Source: Asterias rubens (Eukaryota). From it: a DNA stretch of 64,000 bases. The position numbers and the translations under genes are program-made. The notes under the pieces were generated by a model. The model was not told the DNA's origin. It ran no database searches and saw nothing but the letters and a program-made list of their open reading frames with translations. Shown here piece after piece: positions 39,316 through 57,472 of this stretch (its first letter is position 1; the number at the start of each line of letters is the position of its first letter). Location of the stretch: NCBI RefSeq assembly GCF_902459465.1, contig NC_047072.1, positions 15,066,001 through 15,130,000 of the forward strand, read 5' to 3'.

Positions 39316-39449
39316 AACTGTCATCGATTGTTGATGTTGTCACATAGTGGGGCCTTGGTACGGTTACTATATTGGTGACCTGTAACTGTCATCGATTGTT
39401 GATGTTGTCACATAGTGGGGCCTTGGTACGGTTACTATATTGGTGACCT
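39316..39449. repeat. 68-bp tandem duplication
   Basis: aactgtcatcgattgttgatgttgtcacatagtggggccttggtacggttactatattggtgacct occurs twice. Confidence 0.92.
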
Positions 39450-39808
39450 TACAGGGTACTCGACTGTGTCCAACAGACTATTTCTAAATGACCCATCTTT
39501 TTGATAGGCAGAGAGTATCTCTTTAGTTGTTTTGATATGCAGAATGCATTCGTTTAATCAGTCTACTGTAATATACAAGGTTCGCCTATGATATGCATTA
39601 ATGAGGCTTATTTGTAATGATGTATTGCAGGGTGGAAAAGGGAGAGGCTCCTAGGGGACAAAGCAACGCGACGAAGCGGCCATGACCACGTCAGACTACT
39701 TGATATCACTGCTGTGAGTTTGACGCAGTGAGGACGTGTCATCCTCATCAGCTTAGATCTACCGTGCATTGCCCACCGTCATACCGCTCAAGCAACAGCA
39801 GTGTCAAA

Positions 39809-40025
39809 ATGGCAACATGTACCCTAAGAACAATGTTATTATCTCTCCTAATGATGATAATTGTCTTAACCCGAATGACTTCTGCACTAGTGGTGCCCTT
39901 GACTGTAAATGGAGAATGCCCGATCCACACTGTGCGAACTTTAGATGGAAACAATTGTATGTCATGTGCGTCTTGCTATTCGGACTACTCACCGCAGGAT
40001 TGGCTTTGCATGAACTGCACACAAG
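39809..40025 (+). CDS. First coding exon of a putative TNF-receptor-family protein: signal peptide + single Fn14-like cysteine-rich domain; downstream exons not identified
   Basis: aaaATGG start. MATCTLRTMLLSLLMMIIVLTRMTSA hydrophobic leader, then CPIHTVRTLDGNNCMSCASCYSDYSPQDWLCMNC (C-x12-C-x2-C-x2-C-x10-C-x2-C). Phase-1 donor CAAG/GTAAAT follows directly after the last Cys. Confidence 0.6.
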
Positions 40026-40072
40026 GTAAATATTAGTTTCTAAATAGTGTACGGTATAATGTGTGTGACAGT

Positions 40073-40382
40073 TATTAATTTGCGTTTTTACCCATACACC
40101 GATGTGTGTTAGCACTGTATACTCAGTACTTTCCCGAGTCCTGTGAAAAAAATATCACAGGCATGTTACTCGGGTGGGATTCGAACCCACGACCATTGCA
40201 ATTCTAGAGCAGTGTCTTACCAACTAGACTACCGAGGTTTCCCGGCAGCTAGAGGCAGTTCAAATCCTATGTTTTGGCAGCGGATACCGCAACGATATAA
40301 CAGATGTTAAATTTGCATCGGGGATAAAGAATATTAATTTTGGTTTTGACCCATACACCGATGTGTGTTAGCACTGTATACT
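40073..40382 (-). mobile_element. tRNA-containing repeat with terminal direct repeats
   Basis: 34-bp perfect direct repeat at 40090-40123 and 40349-40382, extending imperfectly to ~50 bp. Internal tRNA-like segment 40167-40238 (minus) with A box and GGTTCGAATCC B box. Confidence 0.8.
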
Positions 40383-40799
40383 GTAACAGTTATTGTCATC
40401 TATATTATAGTGAATAGTGTACATTACTAAATAGCATGCAACTTGAAGAATAAACCCTTTTATAAGCAAACTTTTGAATTGTATATACATTTAACCAACT
40501 TTGGTTTGAAACTATTTACAGTTAATTCTTTCTCCATAAATACTTATGGGTATATAGACTTATGTGTTACCAACTGGAGTAAGGTTTGCAATCATGAACA
40601 GTGGTATGAACTTTCCACCATGAATTCGTTTCATTCAGAGAGGGTATCCAAACAACTTATGTCTGCGGATTATAGTGCATCAGTTGCTGCCGTCAAAGCG
40701 TTTTGACCATCCGTTAAGCAAAAAAAACCTTTGTTATCTCGATGTTAACTAGCAATGAAGACATTATAAACGGTTCTGTTGAAAATTACTGTTTTAGGA

Positions 40800-40927
40800 A
40801 CAATTAGCCATCGTATTAGGGGATAACTAGAGTTCACGGGATGGGTGAAGAAATTAACTTACAATTAGCCATCGTATTAGGGGATAACTCGAGTTCACGG
40901 GATGGGTGAAGAAATTAACTGACAATT
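40800..40927. repeat. 61-bp tandem duplication
   Basis: acaattagccatcgtattaggggataact(a/c)gagttcacgggatgggtgaagaaattaact occurs twice. Confidence 0.92.
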
Positions 40928-43900
40928 GTGATCACAGTTAGATGACAAATGGGTTGAAAATGGAAACGGTCGTATTGACAAAAGACGCGTCTCAATACCC
41001 GTGCATTTATTCTGTTTATATAACAGTTCACTAGCGGGTTTACTTTGATATCCATAAGAGCAGAATCACCTCAGGCATCGGACTGTGATTAATACTATCA
41101 CGAACTTGACTCTTCCTTAAACTGCTTTACACACTGTTAAATGACAAACGCTAAAAGGCGTGCGTGTCCAGATAAAAGGGGAATTAAAAGCCGATTTTTA
41201 CATCTCATTGACGAAAACAGTAAAGCGATACAAGATAATGTCTTCAACCTGATCAAATTGTATTTTGTCTTTGTATCTATCTCTAGGCGCGGTGTTCGCA
41301 CGATCGGCACTCTGTGCCTCGGGGGAACTTTGCTTAATTTCTAAACACGCCTTGAAATTTACCCGTCGCTGAATTCGTCAATTTCACAGTGCGTGTTGTA
41401 TATACTTTGTCGCTGTCAAGTCGAGGTGAATCATGCATTTATTTTCTTCAAACAAGCGAATAGAAAAATACATTTTCAGGTTTTCCGTGTGACTATGTTT
41501 TCATCTTTATCTTTTCGTTTGGGTGATCTTCATCACCATGACGACGGCAATCTTTATTTATATTAAACTTGTCAAACTTTAACTCAATATGCATCTCAAA
41601 CCGCATCGGTCAAATCCTATTAAGCCTTACACAATGGCGCTTTCATAATCCTTACTAGGAATGAACAAGAATATCAAGTTGTGTCTTTAGTGAGGTGGTT
41701 TTATATCTAACGAAAATAAACCAATTCAAACCGACTAAAAATATGGAATGTTCGTACAATGGATTTCATGCACATGAAAGATTTATCCGCTCATGAGAAA
41801 TATGAATGAAAACAATTTATTGTTTGCTTTAACTGCACATACTTCAGAAACTTGGCTTGTGTAATTTTATGATATCTCTGAAGTAAATTTCCCAGGAAAA
41901 TAGTCTGAGAACTTTGAATGATTCTATAATGTTGTAAACGTGCACATTATTCGCTTAAGCTGAGTGAGTATTATGTGAAGCCGCCTCATGGCCACACTGT
42001 AACCAATTTAGCTCAAATCTAAATAAAAGGCGTGGGACTTGCCGTTATAGAAAACAAAGAAGATGTCTCTGAAGATGTCACTGAAGATGTCTGTGTAGGA
42101 GTAAAACTCAAGCCTAACCTGCGATCATGATATCTCTTGCTGAGATAAATCTTTACAACAAATATTGGAATTGTATGTCTTAAACCAGCATCGATTAATC
42201 GATCCTGTATCGTGAATCAATCAGTAATGAATCAATAGTATCTGATGTGTAAACCAATCAGCAACCATATGACAACACACCAATAAATAGGCCAAGGCTT
42301 TAATTATAAAAGTATCAATTATTAACAAATACAATTAATTGCGTTTTTATGAATTATTAATGCTGCCATACCTACTTTTACAATTTATATTCCAAGCTAC
42401 AGTAAATTACACATGCCTTTATCGTATACACAACATAACAGTAATCGCGTAAAACAAAAAAAATCAGCATAATTAATATTTTGATTGTATCAATACAACA
42501 TGCACATGGCCCGATCCATTGCAGTATTGTTTAGCCTGCGGCATTCCATCACTCAATAACTCTCGTCATTGAAATCTCGTCTTGGGGGAAATTGGACAAA
42601 CAATGAGCATGGTGAGATTTCGTTTGATTAGTCGAGCGATATGCGAACTTGGTATCATAACATGGCGTGCACAAACTCTGTTTTAATTTGCATAGAAATC
42701 ATAATGTATGTATGGTGACACGTCTGTTCTGACCTATTATAACTCGGCTAGATCTACTTACATGAAACTGTTTTTGTTATAACACACGTTTTAACAAAAC
42801 CTCTGATGAAACATGTTGGAGCATGTTTGCTGAAGGTTGATTTATTGCGGTATATTTTATGAACCAAAACAGAACGCGAAATTGAAAGATGCAAATGAAC
42901 TCATTTATATTGCCGCAACTGCTGCCTGTATTGTCACTTATGCATCGTGGCGTGCATGCCAAACGTCATATTATTGTGTAAATAGATAAAAGGCCAATTT
43001 ACTACCGTGAATATAACGTTGTATTCGGACGAAGTTTATATTCTAACATAATTTAATATCAGGCGAGATAATTTATAAACTATTTGACTCTCATTTGGAT
43101 ACTTCTTATTATAGCCCTCATCCATCCTGGCTGTGAGCCATTTAATGTCTTGGGATATCAAAGATGATTAACCTTTCAAAGAATTGTATTTTTAATGAAT
43201 AAGTGTACCATGGGAAATACATGGTCTCCTCTCACCTAAATGAGAAGAACATTAAAGGCTGCTTGTGCTGCTTTTAAAAAACAAGGGCAACGTCAATATT
43301 TGTTTCTGTATATAAATAAGCATGCCACAACAGTATACCAAAAGGAGTGAATCTTCATTCTTCCTAAAAGCTCACTTGAAATCTACGTGTTATAAGAGAT
43401 AAACAGGAACAAAACTCGCCCAATCCGTTTTTAAGCATATAGAATGATTGGTTGGATTTTGATTGGTATCAAGTTTTGCATATCCCTCGATGTTTTAGTT
43501 GCTGTGTTTTATGGCATAGACATGCCTTTTTGAAGTTTGACATTATATATGTGTTACCTATATACTTCTGCCCTGCATGCATGAAGCATGCACACACGTC
43601 TTGACTATTTTTGACATGAGTTGTTATGAAAGCATGGTCAGTGCTGGATTTAATCCCAATCCACGCTATTGCATATGACCCTTTCGCAGCTATAACTATA
43701 CCGTGGCCCAGACCTGATTCCAACGCTAATTTTATTATCATCTTTGATTCGGAATCTATCACAGTTGCCCAAGGTTATTATTATTTTCATTTTGACTCCT
43801 TTTTTGCCTAGCGCCCCGTCCATCATCGCTTCATGTTCACTGTTCACCTTATTGTCCCCACCGCTCTGCCTAATTCTTTGAGAATGCCATTTATAACAAC

Positions 43901-46900
43901 CTCCCCTCCAGTCGTCCTTAAAGGAACACAATGTGTTTGTTTGATTCATGGTAACTTCACAGAAAGGTCATTACTTTAAAAAGAAGAAATTGTACTGGCG
44001 CCTTGTTCAGCTATTTGTTGTATGAAGTGGCATGCCTTTTCAATTAACCTGTTGTTATGGATCCTCAATAATATAAACAACGAATGCTCGCAGCAGTAAA
44101 CAGTGTGCGCCATATGCGTTTAAATGTCTCATGCTGATTCAAATTATGGATACCGATTTATTTTCACAGATTGGGTATAACAGAGTTTTGTTTCACCTCT
44201 TGATTTCAATTGTTTGAACGGATAAATAAAGGGTATCCGCATAATTACAATATATTGGGGGTTTTAAATTTTAAATAAACAGGTCTGTTTTTGTTATACA
44301 AAACTTGACATCAAATAGAGACAACTTCAAGATGGACCTTTAGCCTAATATTCTTTTTCTGTTCTATAATCCAGTGGGTTGTCAAACAAGTCCTGTAAGA
44401 GATCCTCAATAGACCAGGTAACCTTTTAGCAGCTTGGAAGTATAAGATAAGACACTTGAGTAACACTCAAGTCTCAGCCAGACACAACTCTTCGTTCGCG
44501 GTTAATATTGCAAGCGAATTTACCTTGAAGGGCAGAGGGTTTAGACGGCCGCCTCAAGCCTGATGGCAATTTCAAGGTTCAAAATGTGAAATCACTTGAT
44601 GATGTGCAAGGAGTTTGACAGGCGAGATTATTAACAATCGGTCACTGTTGTCATTGGGAGATAGCTAGTTTTTCCACTTCAGGGATATATCTGATTTTCA
44701 ACTAGCAATTTTATGTAGGCTACATGCATAGGATAAGCAATGTATGCAAATGTCTTTATTGTAAGTGATCATGACGTTGATTTTGATTTTAGAAAGCACT
44801 ACAAACAAATAAACGCAAGGTGAATGCGCAAGCGTGGTTTTGATCTAAGCGTTATAATTTCCCACAGGATTTAACAGATGAAAAACTACCATTTCATAAT
44901 CCAGCACCTAGCATGCCATGAGGTAATAATGCCATCTTTTAGAGGCTCCGTCCATGATTATAGCCAGCTTAGCCCAAATGCCAAAGCTGGGTTTTAAAGA
45001 AGTTCGTCGTCTTCTTTGAAATTGATCTTCATCCTGTCTGTTTCGTCTCTCATATTAAAAACATATCTTATCTTTCAGCGGCAAGGGTATCAGAACCTGT
45101 TACCGCGCGGCTCAGGTCCCTCTGCTTTGAAAACACTCATGGCAAGACTGTAACTCAACACTCAAGCAACATTAAAACCCTGTCTCTTGTAGAGCTTCTT
45201 TATGTTTCACGGCTTAAGGGACCCAAACTCTCTCCCTGTCTTCACAATGAAAGCTTTTGGATCTTGTATTATAGAGACTATTAGTTTCAGCTCTCAGGAA
45301 ACGAAGTGAGACTTCGCTTTAATTTCCTGGGCAGGGGACACTCTCTACTGTAGTTGTGGTAATGACACAACCGCTGGGCAATATTAACACTGGGGCCAGA
45401 AATAACCGGTTATTACATCGCACGGTTCATAAATTATTGTAGAGAAAGTCATCGCTGAAGTGTGAGTCGGTCCAAGTGAAAGAGATCTACAAATATAGTG
45501 TTTTTCTTTAAGTAAACTAAAGGACGCTGGTTTTTGGCCTTTCAAAACAACTATTTCCATTCGGGTATATTAAATTCAAATAACGTAATTTCATGATGCT
45601 TCACTGTAAAGATCGCGACAGGTCCAGTTACGTTATTTAATATATTGAATATCCATCACAGTGTTAACTCAATGTGTTAAATTTTCCCTTTATCTGATGG
45701 TTGCAGAACTAATATCAAATATTGTTTGGCTGAAAGGTTAGATTTACAAAACAGTTATTGTGTAAACACAGAAACTGCTTGGTAACTATTTGTATCCATT
45801 ATTAAAACATGATCATCTCAAGCCGTGTTCGTCACCAAACATTAATATTGATGTTTTTTTTTGTAGAAGCAAGATCAGTGAGCAAAGAGTGGGGGAAAAC
45901 ATATAGCGATTCCCCCTCCCTCCCCTTCTTCCACCTACATCACCCGAGAGTCAATAACATCTAATGTTAGTCTATGCTATGGAAACCTATTGGTGGTATC
46001 ACATTTAGTGTTATGGTTAGAATTTGAGTTGTATTATTATGTACGAGGCGAGCGTTTGGATATTGGATATTGAGCTCAGGGGAAAGCCATTGATATTACC
46101 CATAAAGCAAGGTTTGACGTCTTTATGGCGTGAGGGCAAGGGCAAAGAGGAACCATTGGCTCAAATTACAACCAAAGATGATTAACATTACGACCTGTTC
46201 ACTCAAAGGTCACGGAAGTACTTGTATTTTTTATACAGTCACAATTGTTTTTCAGCCAGATGTTTAAATCAAAATCATACTTTAAATCAATTTGGTTGGT
46301 TGACTTCAATCAATAACAACCAATGATATTTACGCCGGTTATGATATCCTTTAATATATACTGCACATGTGATTCAGATGCAGTTATTGGGACCTCCCCC
46401 TTGCTATGTTAATCGATCAGAAAGCAAATATGATTATGCAGTGTTTTACACCATTGAAAGGTCAACAATATACTTTTAAGGAAAGGGGAAATATGGCCAC
46501 AGTAAATCGATTGAACTTGAATAGTGTTGGTTTAAGGCGTACGTACAAGTATACGTGCCCAGCAGTGGGTTGATATTACACGCACAGATACAATGACATA
46601 GTGACTTGAAATGACGGTCTTCTGACATGGTTCATCTGGTATCTCCTTTAAAGTCCACTGAAAGTACACTTAAACCAATAGACGCACAGGGGAATCTTAA
46701 GATAACATATCCACTATCACTGATGAGACTAAATCTGGGCCTGCGATGAGGCGAAAAAGGTCGCTGTTCATTCCACGCCATCGCTTTGCTACAGTATCGT
46801 ACCAATTGCTCGCTTCATTTGCTGCACCAGGCAGGGCGAATGCTTACAGCCATGTGCAAGATAAAGGAGTCAGATTGGGGCTGGTTCAACCACAAGTTCA

Positions 46901-49900
46901 ATCATATGGGAATACTCAAATGTAAACTGTTGTGACTCTCATGCATGTGCTCTTTTTAATGAATGGCCTATTTGTTATTCCACTTTCCTATTCTTATTCA
47001 TGATTTTCATGCTAGCTTATATCTTTAATGCATAGCTGATTGTTTATGCCTAGTGAACACATTCATTATATATCGATTTCAAACAGAGAAATTTATCTTT
47101 GGAGGCGAAGCGGCATATTTCGGCCCACCCCCTCTGCCCGTAAACACGTGCATATGATAAAAGGGTACAAGTACTTTTGATGTCATATTACGTTCGTCAT
47201 CCTTGAAACGGAATTACCGTACTTCTCTATCAAAAGTGCATGTGAGCTTTTAGTAAAAGCAAAACAGGCACTTATGCAGAGTGGGAAATGTTGAGCTGCA
47301 GATCGAAGACTAGTCGTGCGTACCAGTTCAATGGGAAGGGACTCATCTAGTATCACAGACATTGGGAAAACATCTCCCGCTGAAGAAGAAAATAAAAAAA
47401 TAAAAAAATCCGGGAACTTGATCGTGTCCATGTCCTTATCTTTAAACTTTGACATGAGTTCCACTCCTTTATGCTCTCAATATATAAAATGAGCTCAGCT
47501 GTCGGCACCATGCGCGCCTGCGCGTTTTTTAAAGTCTCGAAGTACAGTGACTGAACATTTATCAATCGATGAAGCAAGACTCTATAGTTGTCCCTGAACG
47601 CTCTAAACCCCGTCAGCTATCTGTGTAATAGTAGGAAGAAAAGTGCATCAGCACACCTACCCTTGATAATGGTGATGTGTAACTCCCCTGTTATTGGAGT
47701 GTGGCCTTCACTTCAGCCGCTGCAATTGTTTCATTGTCTTCCTTGACGCCACTGATGCACTTATCTAAATGAAAAATGGAAAATTTTAAATAATGAGCTG
47801 CCATTTTTCTTTCATGAGAATATTAGATCTAGACACAGGGTGATGACGCACAACCATTCGGTATTTCGAATTGACAATGCTAATGAAAGAAAACCAATCT
47901 ACGCATGGGGTAATAATTGTGTTACCGGCCATAGACAAAATCTCAATTCAAATGGTGAACAGGATTTAAAATTTACATTTGCGGGAGTCAAATGGTGAAA
48001 GTCCTTCTATACATAGCTCATCCATCAAACATAAAGTTTTCACCGATTATCAATCCATGTAGGCTGTTTGTATTAGCAGGGTTTGTGGGATCAGAGATAA
48101 CATCGGAGATGTTACTTGGGGTATCTCATTTTCAGAATCATTAAAATATACACGTGTACATCTACATATTGGACAGTTTAATCTTTAAGGTAACTGAAAC
48201 CGTGGATCAATATTTTGTCATGCCTTGCTCATTGGCCTATATAATTGGCATGCTACTACGCTGCTTTTACGAAGATAAAATACCCACAGAATTATGCATC
48301 GCTCATGTACAACTCATCTTTGAAAATGTCCCTATGCATGCCCGTTTTCCCCCAACAACAAGACACGAGTTAATGTGTAATTTCTCAGAGGAATAAAATC
48401 TGAGCGAATCACAAATAGCTGTTGACATAAATTTGCTGTTTTCTTTGAGCGTAGGCGCTTTCAATGAAAGGAACATTAGGTTACCCACTTCAGCGTCTTT
48501 CGAGCGCGGCGGCATGCTGTCCAGGCTCACCACCGTTCGGCATACAGCAATTCGTTTTGAAAGCCGTAACGACTATAGAATTTTCCTTAGTGCAACGTTA
48601 GTTGACGATGGTTAATAAATTTAAACAGTAAAAGTATGGCAAATCTTTTAAGTGCAGACCAACTTAACGACTGTTTTTCATATGCAAATTTAATTACTTA
48701 TAGGAGGCGTTGGACTTTCCTGCTCAATTAATTTCCTTTGGTGGTTTTTAATGGGAAATTATTGCAGCATTGTGTTTTGAGATGTTTGTAACGCGTGCCC
48801 TCATAATGATACAACTGTGGCATTTTCCGTATTCATTAAAACATTTTGAACAGTATTTATGTCCCATGTTTCACAACAGTATTACAATGAATGACACACA
48901 CGTTTAAGGCAGCAAAATGTCATATATGAAAATCCTTTCCACAAAATAAATCCATTAGTGTTTTTGTTATAAGCTTACATGTGGCGGACACAATCATTTC
49001 AATGCTGTCTCGTTGCTTAAGGAAAACGCCTAAAGTAATCCGCTCATTAAGTATACAGAAATTTACTATTTTTATGCTAAAAATAAAACAAGGGCAGACA
49101 ACGACGGTGTTTTAAGCTACTGATTTATCGAAAGTGATAGTCAGTAATCATGAAAGATTTGCCGACGGTACAATCCATTACTACGTCTCAACAAATAAAT
49201 CATGATTTTTATCACCCATTTACCCACTATATAGAATGAGTGAAAACTGCAGAGATGTACATCGTGGATCTCATATAAGAAGAAACCCAAATGAAAGCAG
49301 ATGCAAACCGTCGCAAATTACTGCTGGGACATCCAGGGCAATCTTTTAATCTTTCTTATACCCGGTGATTGGAATTGATGCCTGGGTCTTAATGTTTAGG
49401 AGACCATAGATCAAAGGCCCACTTACTTTTCAAATATTCCTCCAGGGAAAGAACAGCTATAGCTCCAATAAAGAAGACCCATTGCATCATTGATAATGTT
49501 GGCCAAAACAAGTCTGTACTGTATGCGTGCTTCCTCTTTTTGAAAAGTATTTAAAGGCACTGTAAATCAAATAGACCATTGATGACTAATTATTATAACA
49601 ATTGAATTCACGTCCAAAAAAAAAACAAGCAAATTCTTTTTAACATGTTATTGAATAGTGCAATTATTAGCCTTGCATCTTTTTGACACTGTGTGTTGAG
49701 AAAGTTGTTTAATTTATTTGTTACTTCATTTCCTTGTGTTGCCAATGAAACATAACAACCTTTCATTCTTTTTATTAACCAAAAACTAAAACTGGTTGAT
49801 CATATTTCGGGTTTTTTGTTGCCAAGATAAAAGGTTTAAATTTATTGGCGTGTATACCTTAATTATGCTGAATTTAGCTCCGATTAAACACTTTGAATAT

Positions 49901-51925
49901 TGGCCTTGCACAACTGTCCACGTTTACCCACGTCCATATTTATGATCACGTATTTTCAACTCGTTGTTGAAGTAAAAACACAAAAACAAAATCCTGAAAT
50001 CTTATAAGTGCATGTTGATGTGAGCGCAGGTGTATGCTAAGTTGTATCGCCCATGGGGTGCCATAACTGATGTATTATTGATTCGTTTTGCCTGCGATTC
50101 ACACAATACATGGTGTGAATACCTGTAAAGTGTCAGTCTTAAGGAGATTAAAATATGCATCTTGTCAGGCTTACTAGCAAAGGACCATCAAGTTCTTGAC
50201 CATTTGAAACAAGTTAATCTTGGATGGCGTGAAATGTTTTTCAAATGTAGGGTTATTGCAGTACGCGTACAACACCATCATGTACTTCTTGGATTTAAAT
50301 GACCAGAATATCAAACTTTCCAACGTGACTCTTATGTTGCACAGCGCCACCATTGACACCAATATCATTCTTTGCACAGTCTGTAAATATTGATACATTT
50401 TCAAAGGTTGTGTTTTTGGTAGCTATATTTTATTTAGCCTAAATTGTACATGGACAATATATATCGAGGACGAGAACGAGCAAGGCGGTCTTATATGCCA
50501 CATCATCATTGCAGATTGTGTGCATGCACACTGCGAACAACTGCAGATGACATCTGTTCAACGCTAAATTCATTTTGCATCACCCAGACATAAGCCAATA
50601 TTACAAAGCATAATTATGTTTTTATTAATTAGCCATAAAAGGGCCGTCTATTAGTCTCCTACAAGTCGTTTAGCTGTGAACCGCCTGTTTGAAATGCACG
50701 CATCGATGCGTAGTCTCCGAATCATTCATTACCTGAGTGATTTGTGTCCCCATCAGAAAACCTACCAGGAAGCCAATTGTACAGTAATTGCGCCTTAATC
50801 AAATTGACTTCATTTTGGTACCGTGTGACAACTTAATGCTTGCCCGTCTGACAACTGCCGATCATGTAGAACGTCATGCGTGAATGAGAATACAGTGGAC
50901 CATAGAGGGGCACGATACATCATTAGAATAACGCAGGCAAAATTGTTAGACACATCAGGAACATCAATTTGTTTGGGGAAAAAAAAAGTGAAGATGAGGT
51001 TGTTTACTCTTTGCACAATGACCCAAATAATAATGACCGCGTCTGGATATTATTATTACTGCATTGTTCTATATTCTGAAGGCGCTTGGTCAGAGAAACA
51101 AAATAATGTAATAATTATTGATATAGTACAATGACCAGTCGATGGACAATTTAATAAAAACACATAAATTATGTTTTGACCATGGCGAGGGGAATGAGCA
51201 GTATGTTGATGCTCACTATAGGGAATGTGATTGTTTTATTTTATTTATACCAATAATTTAAGTTTTCCAATCTTATCAACGCCACGGGAAATGTTTTGTT
51301 CTACCTGCCCTTCCCAAGTTTGACAGATGAAACCAACAGAGGGCAGTATGATGACCTATTAAAAATTCTAACAACAAGTTTAGTAATAAAACCAAAACCA
51401 GGCATTAATTTTTAACAATAAAGTAGACATACGTTGGTACTGTTTTTTCCAGCAGTACAGCCTCTTTACTTTAAATTCATACGGGATACGTTCTGGCTTT
51501 AAATTATATCAAATTCCCACGGCTATTGTTTATTTAATTCATCGCCCCGTTGGGTCTATGATATCCCACTGATAACTGAGGTTTTATGTGCATTGTTCAA
51601 AATCAAAGGCGTGAATGGGAAGGACAAGGTAATTTTTTTAGGAGCTGTGATTGAACTTTGCATCACTGTGTCATATTAACGATGTCAGGGACGGTTCTGC
51701 CCCCCCCCCCCCTCATGATTTATTAACGACCGTGGTTTTATTTTTTACTCAAAACAAACCCGCTCAAACACTCGAAACATTTATTGATTCTCACTTAGTT
51801 TTTAAAGACTTTTTTGTGCAAATAAAGCCTTTAATTTGAGTTGTTTTCCCCTTCCATTTAAAGTTTATTTTGTCTACTGTTTTAAATTTACGCACATAGA
51901 CTTCATTCTGCTGACAGGAGTGTAG

Positions 51926-51978
51926 TTGGCAGTGACATGAAATTAGGACCCCGGGGTCCAATTTCGTGCTGCTGCCAA
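51926..51978. repeat. Short palindromic element
   Basis: ttggcag..atgaaatt.ggacc/ggtccaatttcgt..ctgccaa. Confidence 0.6.
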
Positions 51979-52760
51979 TTCCAAGTCGCCTAACGACCAT
52001 TGCTTTCCTCTTAACAGAGTTATCGCCGCATAAATAGCTAGCTACGTACATATGGAATGCTTAAAGCTATGCGAGCAGAGACTTTCAAATGTTAGTCAGT
52101 ACAAAAACGTAACATTTCCACCTGCTGTACATGTTAGTCAAGAACGTTTCTGTGAGAAGTTCTCCGTCGTTTTTTTTTTAGGGGGGGGGGGGCATAATGC
52201 AATGTTGGAGACCAACACTGCTTGTATGAATAAAAAGCTACACCACACTTCAGGCACAAGGCTAACAAAAATAGACCTCCGTGTTACAGCTAACTTAGTA
52301 CTAATATAGGCTAGAGGGCAGCTGGCAATGCCTCTGGCGGTACACAGATAGGCAATTCAGGCAACTCAGTCCGCAGAACAAGTCAGACCAGAGTGAGAGG
52401 GGCAATCTCCTACTCATTAGGGCCTAGCCTAGCATCCAGCCTAAGTAACATAAGGCCTATTGTTACAATGGCCGATCATGCCGATGGCTGTTTGACAGTT
52501 CAAAAGATAAAAGTAGCTCTAGAATTACCACACAACAACAAAATTTCGACCGTGAAGCGTATTTATTATGTGTTTATTGAAATCTTTAAATATGCCTTAT
52601 TAGTGCAAACTCTCAAACTTTGAACTCACAGGTGTGCCCTCAAGACAAATTTCAATTTGCGCGCGCATTTGCAGACGTTCACAAACACACAAAAGTGTCT
52701 GAAGACGTATATCGAGATATACATCATTACAACAAAGTCAGGACTAAGCCAAGAGATGAA

Positions 52761-55700
52761 ATGTATTTTTTACCTGTTGTACACACATTTTACTCACTAT
52801 TGTTATTCTTCTTGTATGTAATCATGATGTTTAAACCTCTTGGTAAAATTTCACTTCATCATATGCTGCCGCAAAACATTCTTTTTCACCAACGAACTGC
52901 TGACGAACGACTGTTATGCCGATTCTTGTATTTTTAACGGTGGACTTACATAGCGCCCTCTACGAGTAAAGTAAGCTCAACAGTTAGATATGTATGTTTT
53001 AAAAGGTAACTGTTAGCTGCGATCTTGCTTTTAATTACCTACGTAAACCTACGTTGTTGACATCTAGAGGATCGCGGTACTAATTACCTTTTAGTAGCAG
53101 CAAGTGGAATAGATTCTGCCAACGGTGTCTCAAATGGCGCCCTCTTGAGTAAACGTTGAGCCACGTTATAACTGTTGTATCTCTACGCCAGTGAACCGAA
53201 AGAAAATAAAAGTTAAAATTAAATGACTCATTGTGACAAATTAGCAGATATTTTTTGTAAAGATATAAAACATGATATTTTTAAAGCATTACGTACATTG
53301 GCAACTATTAAATGAAATCAACCACTACCGGACTACACTTTTTCAACCATGCATGGATCACTTCCTAAAATTAGTGGTGATGAGGCGATCAGAGACATCC
53401 ATAAAAACCATAGACTTGTTTTCGTACGAAACAGTTTGATTATCTCCTTAAAATTTCTCTAAAATGAGGTATGTGCTCATTAAAATATCACCAAATGATA
53501 CGTTTTATATGTGGTTGTGTAATTGTCAATCGTCACAGGTTTCTCGTCGCTTACTTGTGCCATTCAGCTTTCGCTGACTGATCTGAACACCAACTGGCAA
53601 TGGCAACCTCAAACTACCTTCTTTTATTTCTACTACTACTAGGCCTACAACTTCTAATGTTATTCTTTAATGTTTGTCAATTTCATCTTTGTATTTTGTA
53701 ACCATTAATCTGTTCAGGTGGAGCCCCATTTCTAGGAGATGAGCAGCGTTTATATCAGCGACTGTTTCTAAAGAAACCCTACTACAACAGCCAGCTGCGA
53801 CCTCTGAAGAATAACTCGGATCAAGTCGTCGTACAGTTCACCATGTTGATCAAGCAGATTGTTGACATTGTAAGTTGTATTTTCAACATCAGTTTATAAA
53901 ACGAAATTAAGTAGACTGACATTCCAAGGAAAGACAATTTCTCTTTGTTTCAATGTTGTGGAGCACTGTCTACAAATCCCGGCCATATCTCGCTGGGCCT
54001 TCGCACCACGGCGCGATGCCCCCTTTCGTTCAATGTTGACTCTCTCTGTGAGGTTCGTCACTGTGCAGTGTCTGTGTGCCATCAATATGGGGAAAGAATG
54101 TTTATAGTCATGTTGCGAGTGGGTGGCCCAAGCATTTTGGCCGGGATTGTAGTAGGCACTCATCACGTAGTCATTATACATATTCTGACCCTAAAGAAGT
54201 GAGAGTAAAAGAGTAGACGATTTCTGAGAAAATGTCAATCATATTAATTTAATTATTTTTAGTGTTAAATATTGTTTCAGTTATGTGAATTGCTTTTTAC
54301 AATTTACTGTCACTGTTGGGTCACTGTATCCTAGAATCGAGGACCAACAATGTTATCGTTAAATCAAAGAGAGGTAAGACTTTATACGCTTTTATTAAAC
54401 CTTACTTAAGGTATTGGTCTAAATGATGGAAACATTAATAGCATGATTTTTGATTTTCATAAATTCTTTAAACAGGACGAGCGGAATCAGATAATGAAGA
54501 TGAACATCATACTACAGCAGAATTGGAGAGATCACTGGCTACATTGGGATCCTGATGACTATGGAGGATTGATGGAGTTAAGAGTCCCTGCTTATGATGT
54601 CTGGCTCCCAGACACAACACTTTATGACACGTACGCTTTGTTTATTACACTTTCTAGTTCCAGGATGGTGACAAGCAGAAGTTACCAGGTTTTGGTCTTT
54701 CACAGATTTGTGGTGTAGAAAAAAGGTGTATTCCTGATGAATAAAGAAGCCCTACTACACTACCCCCAAAAAAGAAATCAAATGAGTAAATGTTGGAGCT
54801 AATGTACCCAAAGCCACACCCTCCTGAAGCTGTAACTGTGTACTTGATATTAATGATAGTCACTCCAACACTACTCTAAGCAAATGAATAAAATACTTGT
54901 TAATACTTGTTGATTTGCAACCAATTGTTTTCTTACAATTAAATTGTAAACTTTTGATCACATTATCATAATTCTTGAAAACTTTCCAGACCTGTAATAT
55001 TCAAAAGGTGACGGATTTGAGTTTCCACCGAAAGTTTACAGTTATATACATTTTCAAGTGTTGTAATCAAAAATTTACCATAAAATTGTATCCAATTTAT
55101 ACCAACTCAGATGAAGTTTCAATTTTTTTTCCTCATTTTAAAGCGGCAAGGAACTGTTTGGGTTGATTTGGAAAAAACCCTGATCAAACCAAACTTTAAA
55201 ATGGTTTTTAAAAGCATCACTGTTATTTATTATTGCAGAGCGGACACAAACTCGGCCTATGCTGGCATCACAGGCACAAATGTTGTACTGAGACATGATG
55301 GATTAGTGCAGATGAAAACCAAACCTTACATACAACGTAGCACATGCCACATCAAGATTCGCTTCTTTCCTTTCGATGAACAGAAATGCCAACTGAAATT
55401 TGGGCTGTGGACATATGACTGGAATCATGTAGATCTACAAAACTCAACAGCAGGACCAGACAAATCGCTGTATTTAGAGAATGAGCAATGGGACTTGATG
55501 TATTCATGTTTCAAGAGGAATCTTGAGAGCTACATATGTTGCCCAACTAAGTATGTGGATGTGACGCTTTTCGTTGGCATACGCAGGAAGCCTCTGTACT
55601 ACATGTACAAGTTGGTGATGCCGATTGTTCTACTCTCTGCATTGTCTATGGTGGGTTTCCTGATGCCTTATAATGTGGGTGTGGTCAAGGCAAACCTCAG

Positions 55701-57472
55701 CATCACTCTTATCTTGTCAATGACTGTCTTCCTACTTCTGGTGGCTGAGACTATTCCTAAGACATCAGAAGGACTTCCACTTATCAGTAAGTATTCGTCT
55801 CGTTTGGATTCATTGGAGATGTCTCAGACATTTTGTACTTGTAATGTCACAGTAACATTACAACGCACTAACTTCACAGTCCTTTTTACAATCAAACCCC
55901 TCAGGTGAATACAGTTTAGTAGCTTTTTGTCCCCCGAGAGATAAACTTACATAAACACTTAACAATCATTCCTAAACCTTTGATAGCTGAAGTGTGACCT
56001 TGCAGGAACAATCATGTTGCAGCTGTGTTCCTTTCACTCATCCTCCACCTCACAATCTAATATGTTCCCATCACATTGACATTTTAATCTTATTTGCACA
56101 TCATCAACTACAGGTGAATACTACCTAAGCATCATGTTCCTCATAGCAATCTCAACAGCGATGAACATCACAGTTCTAAACATTTTCCACCGTGGGGAGG
56201 ATGGTAGTGTTGAGGTGCCTCAATGGCTCCGAACGTTGGTGCTCAAGTACATGGCTAGGATCATGTGTATGGATTGTAAGGGTGAATATTTCCTGACCAG
56301 ACCCAATGAGCCCAAGATTGACCAAGCACGACTGGCAATGCTCAGGAAACAAAGATGGTTCAATGCAAGGTGAACAGGAGTTGATTCATTCTTAAAAAAA
56401 TGGAGACTCAATGAAAGTGGGAAAGCCCCTCCAAGTCTACTTTCATGTTTCAAGTTTCAACATGTTCACTTATTTAGTGGAACTTCCCTAATGCCAAACA
56501 ATTATGCAGTTATTTTTCATAGAATCACAGGGATTGTAAGCAGTATTATATTGGGTCATCGTGTGCAAGATGTAGAGATTAATTTCAGAACATTAGTTTG
56601 GGAAACCATAGTCAAACTGTTCTTTTTTATCTTCACATTTTCAATTCAATTCAATTCAATTCAATTTTTATTGGTCCTACCATGGAGGAAATTCAGTTTG
56701 AATACATGCAATTTGAACCTGACATTAATCACAAATTTGACAAGTTCAACGACTACACATTGTGATCATTGGTAAATTGGAAATATTTTCATAATCATAG
56801 TGTACAAGTCTACTTCGGAATACAACATTCATTTCATTCTCAGAGATGTCAACATTAATTGCATCTTGCAATCAATGAGATCTTGTGTAGCAATCAAGGA
56901 GATATTGATGGTTCAACATAACTGGGAAAACATTCCCACATCAGATCAGGGAGGATTTTCATAAGATAAGTTAATTTCCAAAGTACTCTCTGGGTGAGTT
57001 GGCAGATCTGTATACACTGCAGAAATGGCTTAACATTTTGAATGATAAAAACTTACCTCATTTCATTTGCTACTTGCTCAGGTATGGCACATCGTATACA
57101 CCGCTAATTCAAGACTCATCGAGGATGAATAATGATGGCATGCAAGGAGGCTGCAGTAATGGCCACAATGCACAAGCTGAGTTAGACCACTTTGTTGAGA
57201 ATCTTGGAGAATCTGACAACATAAGACTAACCAAGATGGAATCCAACGTCTATGGAATCCTCAGACAGATCCGTTCAGTGCAGAAAAAGAGTGACCGCAC
57301 AGGCAGAGTGCATAGAGAATGGGCCTTGGTGGCCACAGTAACTGACCGCTTGCTGTTCTACATCTATGCCTGCTTTACAGTTGCAATGTCTGTCATAATC
57401 TTACTAGTCAACCCAACTTTAGACGTCCATGATGGAGCTGTATGCGGTACCACAGAAAGTGAGGCAGCATAA
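52761..57472 (+). CDS. Nicotinic acetylcholine receptor alpha-type subunit (Cys-loop receptor), ~527 aa, 6 exons
   Basis: Exons 52761-52842 (signal peptide, least certain), 53718-53869, 54476-54630, 55239-55786, 56114-56369, 57082-57472 (1584 nt, phases consistent). WLPDTTLYD (loop A), Cys-loop CHIKIRFFPFDEQKC, loop B GLWTYD, loop C YICCPTKY with vicinal cysteines, M1-M3, MA helix EWALVATVTDRLLFYIY and M4. Confidence 0.93.
56640..56665. repeat. (TTCAA)n microsatellite
   Basis: Five consecutive ttcaa units in the last nAChR intron. Confidence 0.85.

What the first reader, a model, noticed from the sequence alone, without database searches (positions are those of the whole stretch)
39809..40025. 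Fn14/TWEAK-receptor-like single-CRD exon in an invertebrate genome
Seen: a strong-context ATG, a ~26-aa hydrophobic leader, then CPIHTVRTLDGNNCMSCASCYSDYSPQDWLCMNC and a phase-1 donor. Knowledge, recalled: the human Fn14 (TNFRSF12A) CRD is CSRGSSWSADLDKCMDCASCRARPHSDFCLGC, spacing C-x12-C-x2-C-x2-C-x8-C-x2-C. Five of six cysteines keep identical spacing, CMxCASC matches, and the D45 and M50 positions implicated in TWEAK binding are identical, with an Asp near the D62 position. Inference: this atypical short-CRD class (Fn14/BCMA/TACI-like) is usually treated as vertebrate, so a true orthologue here would push it back to the deuterostome ancestor. I could not confidently find the stalk/TM/TRAF-tail exons in 40.0-52.7 kb.
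Basis: partly seen in the sequence, partly recalled or inferred. Interest (0 to 1): 0.75.

Follow-up and report, generated by a model that had tools for sequence, protein, structure and literature searches.

The report
Fn14-like domain on a starfish nicotinic receptor
The exon is real, but it is the first coding exon of a starfish nicotinic acetylcholine receptor subunit, not of a TWEAK receptor. This puts a small TNF-receptor-type (Fn14-like) cysteine-rich domain on top of an ion channel, an architecture shared by starfish and acorn worms that I found described in no paper.

Summary
Window 39809-40025 (+) encodes a start codon, a roughly 26-residue signal peptide, a six-cysteine module (C-x12-C-x2-C-x2-C-x10-C-x2-C) and a phase-1 GT donor.

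The interpretation as an Fn14/TWEAK-receptor orthologue does not hold. The exon splices across a 13.7-kb intron to 53718. It is exon 1 of the annotated Asterias rubens gene "neuronal acetylcholine receptor subunit alpha-10-like" (XP_033635488.1, 572 aa). That protein maps to the window at 100% identity in six GT-AG exons. No transmembrane or TRAF-tail exon follows the module.

The resemblance to Fn14 is real at domain level:
- A profile of eight such modules finds Xenopus Fn14 at E 1.5e-7 and human and mouse Fn14 at about 1e-3 as the top PDB matches.
- None of 2000 shuffles that keep the cysteines fixed reaches the real score.
- An AlphaFold model (pLDDT 81) ranks Fn14, TACI, Grindelwald and BCMA first, though no single match is significant.

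The same module-plus-receptor architecture occurs in Acanthaster and Patiria, with an identical intron. It also occurs in the acorn worms Ptychodera (two genes) and Glandiceps. In one Ptychodera gene I mapped alternative first exons with and without the module. A sea cucumber keeps only half of it.

Verdict: an annotated gene with an apparently undescribed domain architecture. Its function is unknown; the likeliest role is an extracellular docking or modulatory module.

The parts
39629..39808 (+). 5' untranslated part of exon 1. The transcript start is at or upstream of 39629 in one run; the other run's contig reaches back only to 39771.
   Evidence: the X1 contig covers 39629-40027 and the X2 contig covers 39771-40027. 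The stretch is about 85% identical in two related starfish contigs.
39809..39886 (+). Start codon and signal peptide (residues 1-26).
   Evidence: hydrophobic leader ending ..MTSA. The cleavage site is inferred, not predicted with a tool.
39917..40018 (+). Fn14-type six-cysteine CRD (C37 to C70).
   Evidence: sequence; predicted fold. Within the module there is 1 non-synonymous against 3 synonymous changes versus one related starfish contig, and 1 against 6 versus the other.
39809..40025 (+). Coding part of exon 1, ending in a phase-1 donor G|gtaaat.
40026..53717 (+). Intron 1 (13,692 bases). It contains a very high-copy tRNA-derived repeat at about 40075-40400.
   Evidence: X2 has no depth beyond the repeat in 40400-45399, and X1 only background of about 11 or less..
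53718..53869 (+). Exon 2: linker and N-terminal helix of the ligand-binding domain (GAPFLGDEQRLY...). Its acceptor is ..ttcag|GT, phase 1.
   Evidence: Starting with GT explains why the RNA contigs matched 2 bases past 40025.
54476..54630 (+). Exon 3 (DERNQ...WRDHWLHW...).
55239..55786 (+). Exon 4: Cys-loop, loop-C vicinal Cys pair, M1 and M2.
   Evidence: RNA runs X1, X2 and X3, which hold exon 1, also hold this exon.
56114..56369 (+). Exon 5: M3 and the start of the cytoplasmic loop.
57082..57472 (+). Exon 6: rest of the cytoplasmic loop, M4 and the stop codon.
   Evidence: The annotated coding range in LR699102.1 is 17,664 bases, which equals 39809-57472.

Best explanation
Window 39809-40025 is the first coding exon of an Asterias rubens alpha9/alpha10-like nicotinic acetylcholine receptor subunit gene (XP_033635488.1). 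The gene has six coding exons, spanning 39809-57472.

The exon supplies the subunit's signal peptide and a roughly 34-residue, three-disulfide CRD of the small TNF-receptor class. Its nearest relative is the Fn14/TNFRSF12A CRD. A flexible linker of about 9 residues ties the module to the N-terminal helix of the ligand-binding domain, so in the pentamer it would sit at the apex of the extracellular domain.

Shown: the gene model, transcription and splicing of the exon, the similarity to Fn14, conservation of the architecture in starfish and acorn worms, and purifying selection on the module.

Inferred: the module is homologous to TNF-receptor CRDs (about 0.75). It probably joined the receptor gene when an upstream signal-peptide-plus-CRD first exon, in phase 1, was captured.

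Inferred and untested (about 0.3): the module is an extracellular protein-docking site that binds a soluble or matrix partner, possibly a trimer with a TNF or C1q fold, to position or modulate the channel. It is not part of the acetylcholine site. In one Ptychodera gene, alternative first exons give isoforms with and without the module, which fits an optional regulatory add-on.
For: Gene model:
- P0022 and P0036 begin with the exon-1 peptide and run straight into the receptor's N-terminal helix.
- P0036 maps to the window at 100% identity in six exons with GT-AG borders. The annotated range equals 39809-57472.
- Pfam finds Neur_chan_LBD at E 1.7e-53 and Neur_chan_memb at E 2.6e-31.

Splicing:
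- RNA contigs stop matching at 40025 plus 2 bases and continue outside 39400-45399.
- The acceptor at 53717|53718 is phase 1 and the exon starts with GT.
- The same RNA runs hold exon 4.
- No protein of 84-266 aa carrying this peptide turned up in a word-index search of about 5.8 billion protein clusters, apart from two genomic read-through ORFs.

Module:
- Profile against PDB: Xenopus Fn14 at 1.5e-7, human and mouse Fn14 at about 1e-3.
- 0 of 2000 Cys-fixed shuffles reach the real score.
- AlphaFold2 gives pLDDT 81 with a hairpin followed by a helix.
- Fn14, TACI, Grindelwald and BCMA head both fold searches.

Conservation:
- Acanthaster and Patiria have the same exon with the same G|GT phase-1 intron.
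- Ptychodera has the module in two genes. Glandiceps has it with the exact Fn14 spacing.
- In one Ptychodera gene, alternative first exons with and without the module join the same exon 2.
- In both related starfish contigs, synonymous changes outnumber non-synonymous ones within the module.
- The linker has pLDDT below 50 in the extracellular-domain model.
Against: - I did not read an RNA molecule across the 40025-to-53718 junction. The single read-laying run covered only 39400-45399, so the join rests on annotation, phase and sequence fit, and co-occurrence in runs.
- All Pfam hits to TNF-receptor families are below their gathering scores.
- No fold match is individually significant: Foldseek E is at least 0.15 and VIA-align Z is at most 2.6.
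- Iron-sulfur CxxCxxC proteins appear from E 3e-3, so cysteine composition inflates the scores.
- AlphaFold may have learned the Fn14 fold.
- No binding partner is known, and TWEAK-contact residues are not conserved across the family.
- The Glandiceps model has odd micro-exons between the module and the helix.
Confidence: 0.85

Rival explanations
1. The exon starts a stand-alone Fn14/TWEAK-receptor orthologue whose stalk, transmembrane and TRAF-binding exons lie further downstream.
For: The module resembles Fn14. The stretch 45400-53717 was not covered by the RNA lay-down.
Against: - The annotated protein joins exon 1 directly to the receptor's helix exon in three starfish genera and two acorn-worm genera.
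- No protein of 84-266 aa with this peptide turned up in that search, although it includes the annotated Asterias proteomes.
- No exon-level RNA depth lies in 40400-45399.
- The receptor has no usable signal-peptide exon of its own. The ATG at 53601 runs into a stop at 53700 and would need an intron of only 27-40 bases.
Confidence: 0.03
2. The six-cysteine module is a lineage-specific small disulfide domain that resembles Fn14 by convergence, through a short framework and cysteine bias. It is not homologous to TNF-receptor CRDs.
For: - All Pfam scores are below threshold.
- Fold-match E-values are at least 0.15 and Z is at most 2.6.
- Human Fn14, at 22 bits, sits only just above iron-sulfur noise at 20 bits.
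- A whole-library phmmer search found no TNF receptor.
Against: - Xenopus Fn14 scores 34 bits, E 1.5e-7, well above the noise.
- Non-cysteine residues carry the signal: 0 of 2000 Cys-fixed shuffles reach the real score.
- The acorn-worm modules have the exact Fn14 spacing, plus shared CPEG and Y residues.
- Two independent fold libraries both put Fn14 first, with TACI and BCMA among the next few matches.
Confidence: 0.2
3. The fusion is an annotation or read-through artefact. The CRD exon belongs to a neighbouring gene and is only occasionally spliced onto the receptor gene.
For: First introns are very long: 13.7 kb here and 75-89 kb in acorn worms. RNA runs X19 and X20 hold exon 4 but not exon 1.
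Against: - Exon-1 contigs have depths of about 170-185 and carry 883-2171 further bases.
- Intron position and phase are identical in three starfish genera and in a sea cucumber.
- Between Asterias and Patiria the module is about as conserved (27 of 34 residues) as the whole extracellular region (78%).
- No alternative downstream partner exon was found.
Confidence: 0.05

Closest known systems
Fn14 / TNFRSF12A cysteine-rich domain (PDB 2kn0 Xenopus, 2eqp/2rpj/2kmz mammalian; Pfam PF12191)
   Same: A single six-Cys module with C-x12-C-x2-C-x2-C-x8-C-x2-C spacing. The spacing is exact in acorn worms and has x10 in place of x8 in starfish. The predicted topology is a hairpin followed by a helix. 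Fn14 is the best sequence and fold match.
   Different: The module is followed by a Cys-loop receptor subunit, not by a stalk, a transmembrane helix and a TRAF-binding tail. Pfam scores are below the gathering score. TWEAK-contact residues are not conserved as a set.
Other small single-CRD TNF receptors: BCMA, TACI CRD2, Drosophila Grindelwald
   Same: The same size class and the same hairpin-plus-helical-module arrangement. They are among the top fold matches. PMC8024323 groups Fn14, BCMA, TACI and Grindelwald by topology.
   Different: Sequence identity is 13-26%. The DxL-type hairpin motif that BCMA and TACI use to bind ligand is not present. Grindelwald's CxxCxxxC signature differs from the CxxCxxC found here.
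Vertebrate alpha9/alpha10 and alpha7-type nicotinic receptor subunits
   Same: Neur_chan_LBD and Neur_chan_memb domains, a C-x13-C Cys-loop, a vicinal Cys pair in loop C and four membrane segments.
   Different: An extra N-terminal CRD lies ahead of the first helix. The residue at the usual -1' glutamate position reads Val (noted only, not analysed).
DeCLIC, a bacterial pentameric channel with added N-terminal domains
   Same: A pentameric ligand-gated channel with an additional modulatory domain ahead of the canonical extracellular domain (PMC9897478).
   Different: DeCLIC is bacterial, its added domains have an unrelated fold and it is regulated by calcium. The starfish case is an animal receptor with a TNF-receptor-type module.

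Membership tests
Fn14 / TNFRSF12A receptor (orthologue) | Single CRD with the Fn14 cysteine framework | tested here: met
   Starfish have x10 instead of x8 in one loop; acorn worms match exactly.
Fn14 / TNFRSF12A receptor (orthologue) | Pfam PF12191 at or above the gathering score (24.9 bits) | tested here: not met
   Scores are 14.6-21 bits in six proteins.
Fn14 / TNFRSF12A receptor (orthologue) | Type I membrane protein: the CRD is followed by a short stalk and one transmembrane helix | tested here: not met
   The CRD is followed by a linker and the pLGIC ligand-binding domain.
Fn14 / TNFRSF12A receptor (orthologue) | Short cytoplasmic tail with a TRAF-binding motif | tested here: not met
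   The gene has no such exon. The cytoplasmic part is the receptor's M3-M4 loop.
Fn14 / TNFRSF12A receptor (orthologue) | Binds TWEAK through conserved hairpin and helix residues | not testable with these tools
   By alignment only: D45 and M50 are kept in A. rubens but vary in orthologues, and K48 and D62 are not kept.
TNF-receptor superfamily CRD (small hairpin-plus-helix class) | Significant profile similarity to solved TNF-receptor CRDs | tested here: met
   Xenopus Fn14 at E 1.5e-7, human and mouse Fn14 at about 1e-3, as the top three of 177,635 sequences. Shuffle control.
TNF-receptor superfamily CRD (small hairpin-plus-helix class) | [quoted passage not shown] | tested here: inconclusive
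   The AlphaFold2 model has pLDDT 81 with strands 9-11 and 18-20 and a helix at 21-27. Fn14, TACI, Grindelwald and BCMA rank first, but E is at least 0.15 and Z at most 2.6. Disulfide pairing could not be read because no coordinates were available.
Nicotinic / Cys-loop receptor alpha-type subunit | Neur_chan_LBD and Neur_chan_memb domains with four membrane segments | tested here: met
   E 1.7e-53 and 2.6e-31.
Nicotinic / Cys-loop receptor alpha-type subunit | C-x13-C Cys-loop and a vicinal Cys pair in loop C | tested here: met
   Both are read directly in the exon-4 translation.
Nicotinic / Cys-loop receptor alpha-type subunit | Gated by acetylcholine and cation selective | not testable with these tools
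The name comes from automatic annotation.

The most novel reading that the evidence does not exclude
An Fn14-type TNF-receptor CRD was captured as a 5' exon by alpha9/10-like nicotinic receptor genes in the common ancestor of echinoderms and hemichordates. This would make an ion channel that directly docks a ligand with a TNF or C1q fold, so the channel would be anchored or modulated by a cytokine. The module would also be the closest invertebrate relative of the vertebrate Fn14 CRD, placing that CRD type before the vertebrates and pointing to exon shuffling between a TNF receptor and a neurotransmitter receptor.
Probability: 0.2. Interest if true: 0.85.

Novelty: new variant of a known kind. 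Interest (0 to 1): 0.6.

Why it matters
Animal Cys-loop receptors are treated as having a fixed plan: signal peptide, ligand-binding domain, four membrane helices. Extra N-terminal domains are discussed for bacterial relatives such as DeCLIC (PMC9897478).

Here a TNF-receptor-type module sits on a nicotinic receptor subunit. It is conserved with the same intron position across starfish and is present in acorn worms. At least one acorn-worm gene makes it optional through alternative first exons. That gives a concrete, testable case of a new regulatory or anchoring input to a pentameric channel.

It also bears on TNF-receptor evolution. The Fn14-type CRD, known from vertebrate Fn14, would predate the vertebrates, but in a different protein context. 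A stand-alone Fn14 receptor in invertebrates is not shown.

For genome annotation, it is a warning that a convincing domain-plus-signal-peptide first exon says little about the rest of the gene.

Tried and rejected
1. I looked for transmembrane exons downstream by hydrophobicity. It gave only weak, unsupported candidates. RNA then showed no exons in 40.4-45.4 kb.
2. A phmmer search of the 72-aa peptide against 1.84 billion representatives returned only a genomic read-through ORF (P0001). The other hits were repeat-driven false positives (P0002-P0005).
3. P0001 and P0006 looked at first like spliced products. Both are ORFs running into the intron on short genomic contigs.
4. A scan of metagenome contigs for the 3' end of exon 1 found nothing.
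5. I considered that the receptor might use a local start at 53601 (MATSNY...). I rejected this because the frame closes at 53700 and only a 27-40 base intron could rescue it.
6. I searched with the receptor's main exon to catch partial transcripts. It returned only truncated models. A longer paralogue used as query gave the decisive full-length proteins.
7. I checked whether the 2428-nt contig would end at a poly(A) signal 671 bases past the stop codon. No canonical AATAAA is there, so the check is uninformative.
8. I looked for the module within 10 kb upstream of the sea urchin (Lytechinus) orthologue. It was not found, but the gene model lacks its 5' end, so this is unresolved.
9. Four of the literature searches looked for an invertebrate Fn14 or a CRD-bearing pentameric channel. 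None found such a description. The library is limited to open-access papers and preprints.

Full report
**Observation**

An ATG at 39809 sits in a good context. The 72-codon frame encodes a hydrophobic leader and then six cysteines spaced C-x12-C-x2-C-x2-C-x10-C-x2-C. The donor is CAAG|gtaaat after 40025, in phase 1.

On the single peptide, Pfam's only hit is PF12191 (stn_TNFRSF12A) at E 8.5e-4 and 20.2 bits, below the gathering score of 24.9. Part of that score comes from the signal peptide, since the module alone scores 14.6 bits. The best PDB sequence hit is Xenopus Fn14 at E 1.1.

**Is the exon used, and what does it join?**

RNA runs hold the exon. I laid four runs on 39400-45399.
- A 1282-nt contig (depth 170) covers 39629-40027 with its first 399 bases.
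- A 2428-nt contig (depth 185) covers 39771-40027 with its last 257 bases.
- The remaining 883 and 2171 bases of these contigs lie outside the stretch.
- Nothing else in 40.4-45.4 kb reaches exon-level depth.
- The segment at about 40075-40400 is a very high-copy repeat.

So the exon is transcribed, is spliced at 40025, and its partner probably begins with GT, because both contigs matched two bases into the intron.

A search of 1.84 billion representative proteins gave only P0001. A search for proteins of 84-266 aa gave only P0001 and P0006. Both are ORFs reading into the intron on short genomic contigs from related starfish. No short Fn14-sized protein with this peptide was found.

**The downstream gene**

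The + strand from about 53.7 to 57.5 kb carries exons of a nicotinic receptor subunit. Its N-terminal-helix exon follows the acceptor ..ctgttcag|GTGGAGCC at 53717|53718. This acceptor is phase 1 and the exon starts with GT, which is exactly what the RNA contigs require.

A nearby ATG at 53601 encodes a leader-like peptide. It runs into a stop at 53700 and could reach the helix exon only through a 27-40 base intron, so the receptor has no plausible first exon of its own there.

**Decisive result**

I searched with a 451-aa paralogue so that full-length proteins fell inside the tool's length window. This returned P0022, the Asterias amurensis [quoted passage not shown]. Its first 72 residues are identical to the exon peptide and run straight into G-GAPFLGDEQRLY..., the helix exon.

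Its cluster mate P0036 (A. rubens XP_033635488.1) maps to the window at 100% identity over all 572 residues. The six GT-AG exons are 39809-40025, 53718-53869, 54476-54630, 55239-55786, 56114-56369 and 57082-57472.

The annotated coding range in A. rubens LR699102.1 is 17,664 bases, equal to 39809-57472. Pfam finds Neur_chan_LBD (E 1.7e-53) and Neur_chan_memb (E 2.6e-31) and no annotated domain over the first 80 residues. The RNA runs that hold exon 1 (X1, X2, X3) also hold exon 4.

I did not read a molecule across the junction. The read-laying run was already spent.

**Is the module really Fn14-like?**

*Sequence.* A profile of five modules found Xenopus Fn14 at E 4.3e-5. With eight modules (five starfish, three acorn-worm; alignment A5), the top three of 177,635 PDB sequences are:
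- Xenopus Fn14 at E 1.5e-7 (34 bits);
- human Fn14 at 8e-4;
- mouse Fn14 at 1e-3.

Iron-sulfur CxxCxxC proteins follow from 3e-3, which marks the level of cysteine-driven noise. I shuffled the non-cysteine residues of the Fn14 segments while keeping the cysteines fixed. None of 2000 shuffles reached the real score: 35.6 against a maximum of 21.9 for Xenopus, and 21.5 against 20.1 for human. Each orthologue on its own hits only TNF-receptor-type Pfam families near the top (PF12191, TNFR_c6, TACI-CRD2), all below threshold, plus occasional zinc-finger noise.

*Fold.* AlphaFold2 on the module gives pLDDT 81, with a hairpin at 9-11 and 18-20 and a helix at 21-27.
- Foldseek against PDB ranks Xenopus Fn14, human Fn14, (megalin), TACI, Grindelwald, (DR5), BCMA.
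- Against Swiss-Prot models it ranks human Fn14, mouse Fn14, human TACI, mouse TACI, and BCMA eighth.
- The only chains with VIA-align Z of 2 or more are Grindelwald, BCMA and Fn14.
- None of these matches is individually significant. E is at least 0.15 and Z at most 2.6, as expected for about 35 residues. The ranking is the evidence, not the scores.

I put homology to the small TNF-receptor CRD class at about 0.75.

**Conservation**

- Acanthaster (P0024) and Patiria (P0025) have the same module and the same G|GT phase-1 intron three residues after the last Cys. Their first introns are 14 and 24 kb.
- Against the two related starfish contigs, changes within the module are 1 non-synonymous to 3 synonymous, and 1 to 6. 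The intron diverges quickly.
- Between Asterias and Patiria the module is about 79% identical (27 of 34 residues), like the whole extracellular region (78%).
- Three acorn-worm proteins carry a module with the exact Fn14 spacing ahead of the same helix: P0029 (Glandiceps) and P0037 and P0038 (two Ptychodera genes).
- In the Ptychodera gene I mapped, a distal first exon (signal peptide plus module, 89 kb upstream) and a proximal one (signal peptide only, 30 kb upstream) both join the same exon 2. From the flanking bases, both junctions appear to be phase 1.
- The sea cucumber orthologue keeps only the C-x8-C-x2-C half, at the same intron position and phase, behind a long unrelated extension.
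- Sea urchin models lack their 5' ends, so that class is unresolved.
- The Glandiceps model has doubtful micro-exons between the module and the helix.

**Mechanism**

Shown: exon 1 supplies the subunit's signal peptide and an N-terminal CRD. The linker to the first helix has low model confidence (pLDDT below 50), so the module is probably a tethered, independent unit at the apex of the extracellular domain.

Inferred (about 0.3): it is a protein-docking site for an extracellular partner that positions or modulates the channel. The support for this is indirect:
- The hairpin TVRTLDG is invariant across five starfish.
- At least one acorn-worm gene makes the module optional.
- CRDs of this class bind trimers with a TNF fold through the hairpin (PMC8024323).
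- From my own knowledge, not tested here: C1q/TNF-fold proteins recruit ionotropic glutamate receptors through their N-terminal domains, which is a functional analogy.

Residues that contact TWEAK are not conserved as a set, so a TWEAK-like ligand is not implied.

A likely origin is capture of an upstream signal-peptide-plus-CRD first exon by a receptor gene whose exon 2 is in phase 1.

**Comparison and novelty**

The gene itself is publicly annotated, by an automatic pipeline. Four of the literature searches looked for an invertebrate Fn14 or a pentameric channel carrying such a domain. None found a description. The library covers only open-access papers and preprints.

DeCLIC is described as the only family member with an extra N-terminal domain whose structure has been determined (PMC9897478). 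Small single-CRD TNF receptors are not vertebrate-only: Grindelwald has this topology, and a preprint reports Grindelwald-like receptors across invertebrates.

**Verdict**

The Fn14-receptor reading is refuted. The domain-level similarity to Fn14 is supported. The interesting result is an undescribed architecture, a TNF-receptor-type CRD on an ambulacrarian nicotinic receptor subunit, whose function is open.

Noticed in passing
window 40075-40400 (tRNA-like core 40165-40238, - strand): A tRNA-derived, SINE-like repeat inside intron 1. ARAGORN calls a tRNA-Ser(AGA)-like core. Summed contig depth in the RNA runs is about 100,000-270,000, and there are many rearranged joints, which indicates a very abundant repeat family.
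   Followed up: partly
window 53601-53702: An ATG opens a signal-peptide-like frame (MATSNYLLLFLLLLG...) 117 bases upstream of exon 2 and in the same frame, but it is closed by a TAA at 53700. It might be a decayed proximal first exon encoding a signal peptide only, like the one still used in Ptychodera.
   Followed up: partly
window 55600-55750 (exon 4, M1-M2 region): The stretch before M2 reads ..PYNVGVVKANLSITL.., with Val where cation-selective nicotinic receptors usually have the -1' Glu. The starfish, sea cucumber and acorn-worm relatives share this.
   Followed up: no
L001 around the exon-1 donor (alignment A1, columns 495-500): In the contig from GCA_014845345.1 the donor reads CAAGTTAA instead of CAAGGTAA. 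The canonical phase-1 GT is therefore absent at the homologous position. This could be a draft-assembly error, a polymorphism or a shifted donor.
   Followed up: no
window 40013-40021: An N-glycosylation sequon (N-C-T) overlaps the last cysteine of the module. All starfish and two of the three acorn-worm modules keep it.
   Followed up: no
P0035 (A. amurensis isoform X2); window exons 3-6: An annotated 458-aa isoform starts with 9 other residues and joins at exon 3 (54476). It lacks the signal peptide, the module and the N-terminal helix. It may be non-functional or a modelling artefact.
   Followed up: no
L008 43495-44841 (- strand) and L009 14809-33196 and 54862-61137 (- strand): The long early introns of the sea urchin and sea cucumber orthologues contain nested genes on the opposite strand. 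One is a 7tm_1 GPCR, one is a 536-aa gene with no Pfam hit on record and one is an ankyrin-repeat protein.
   Followed up: no
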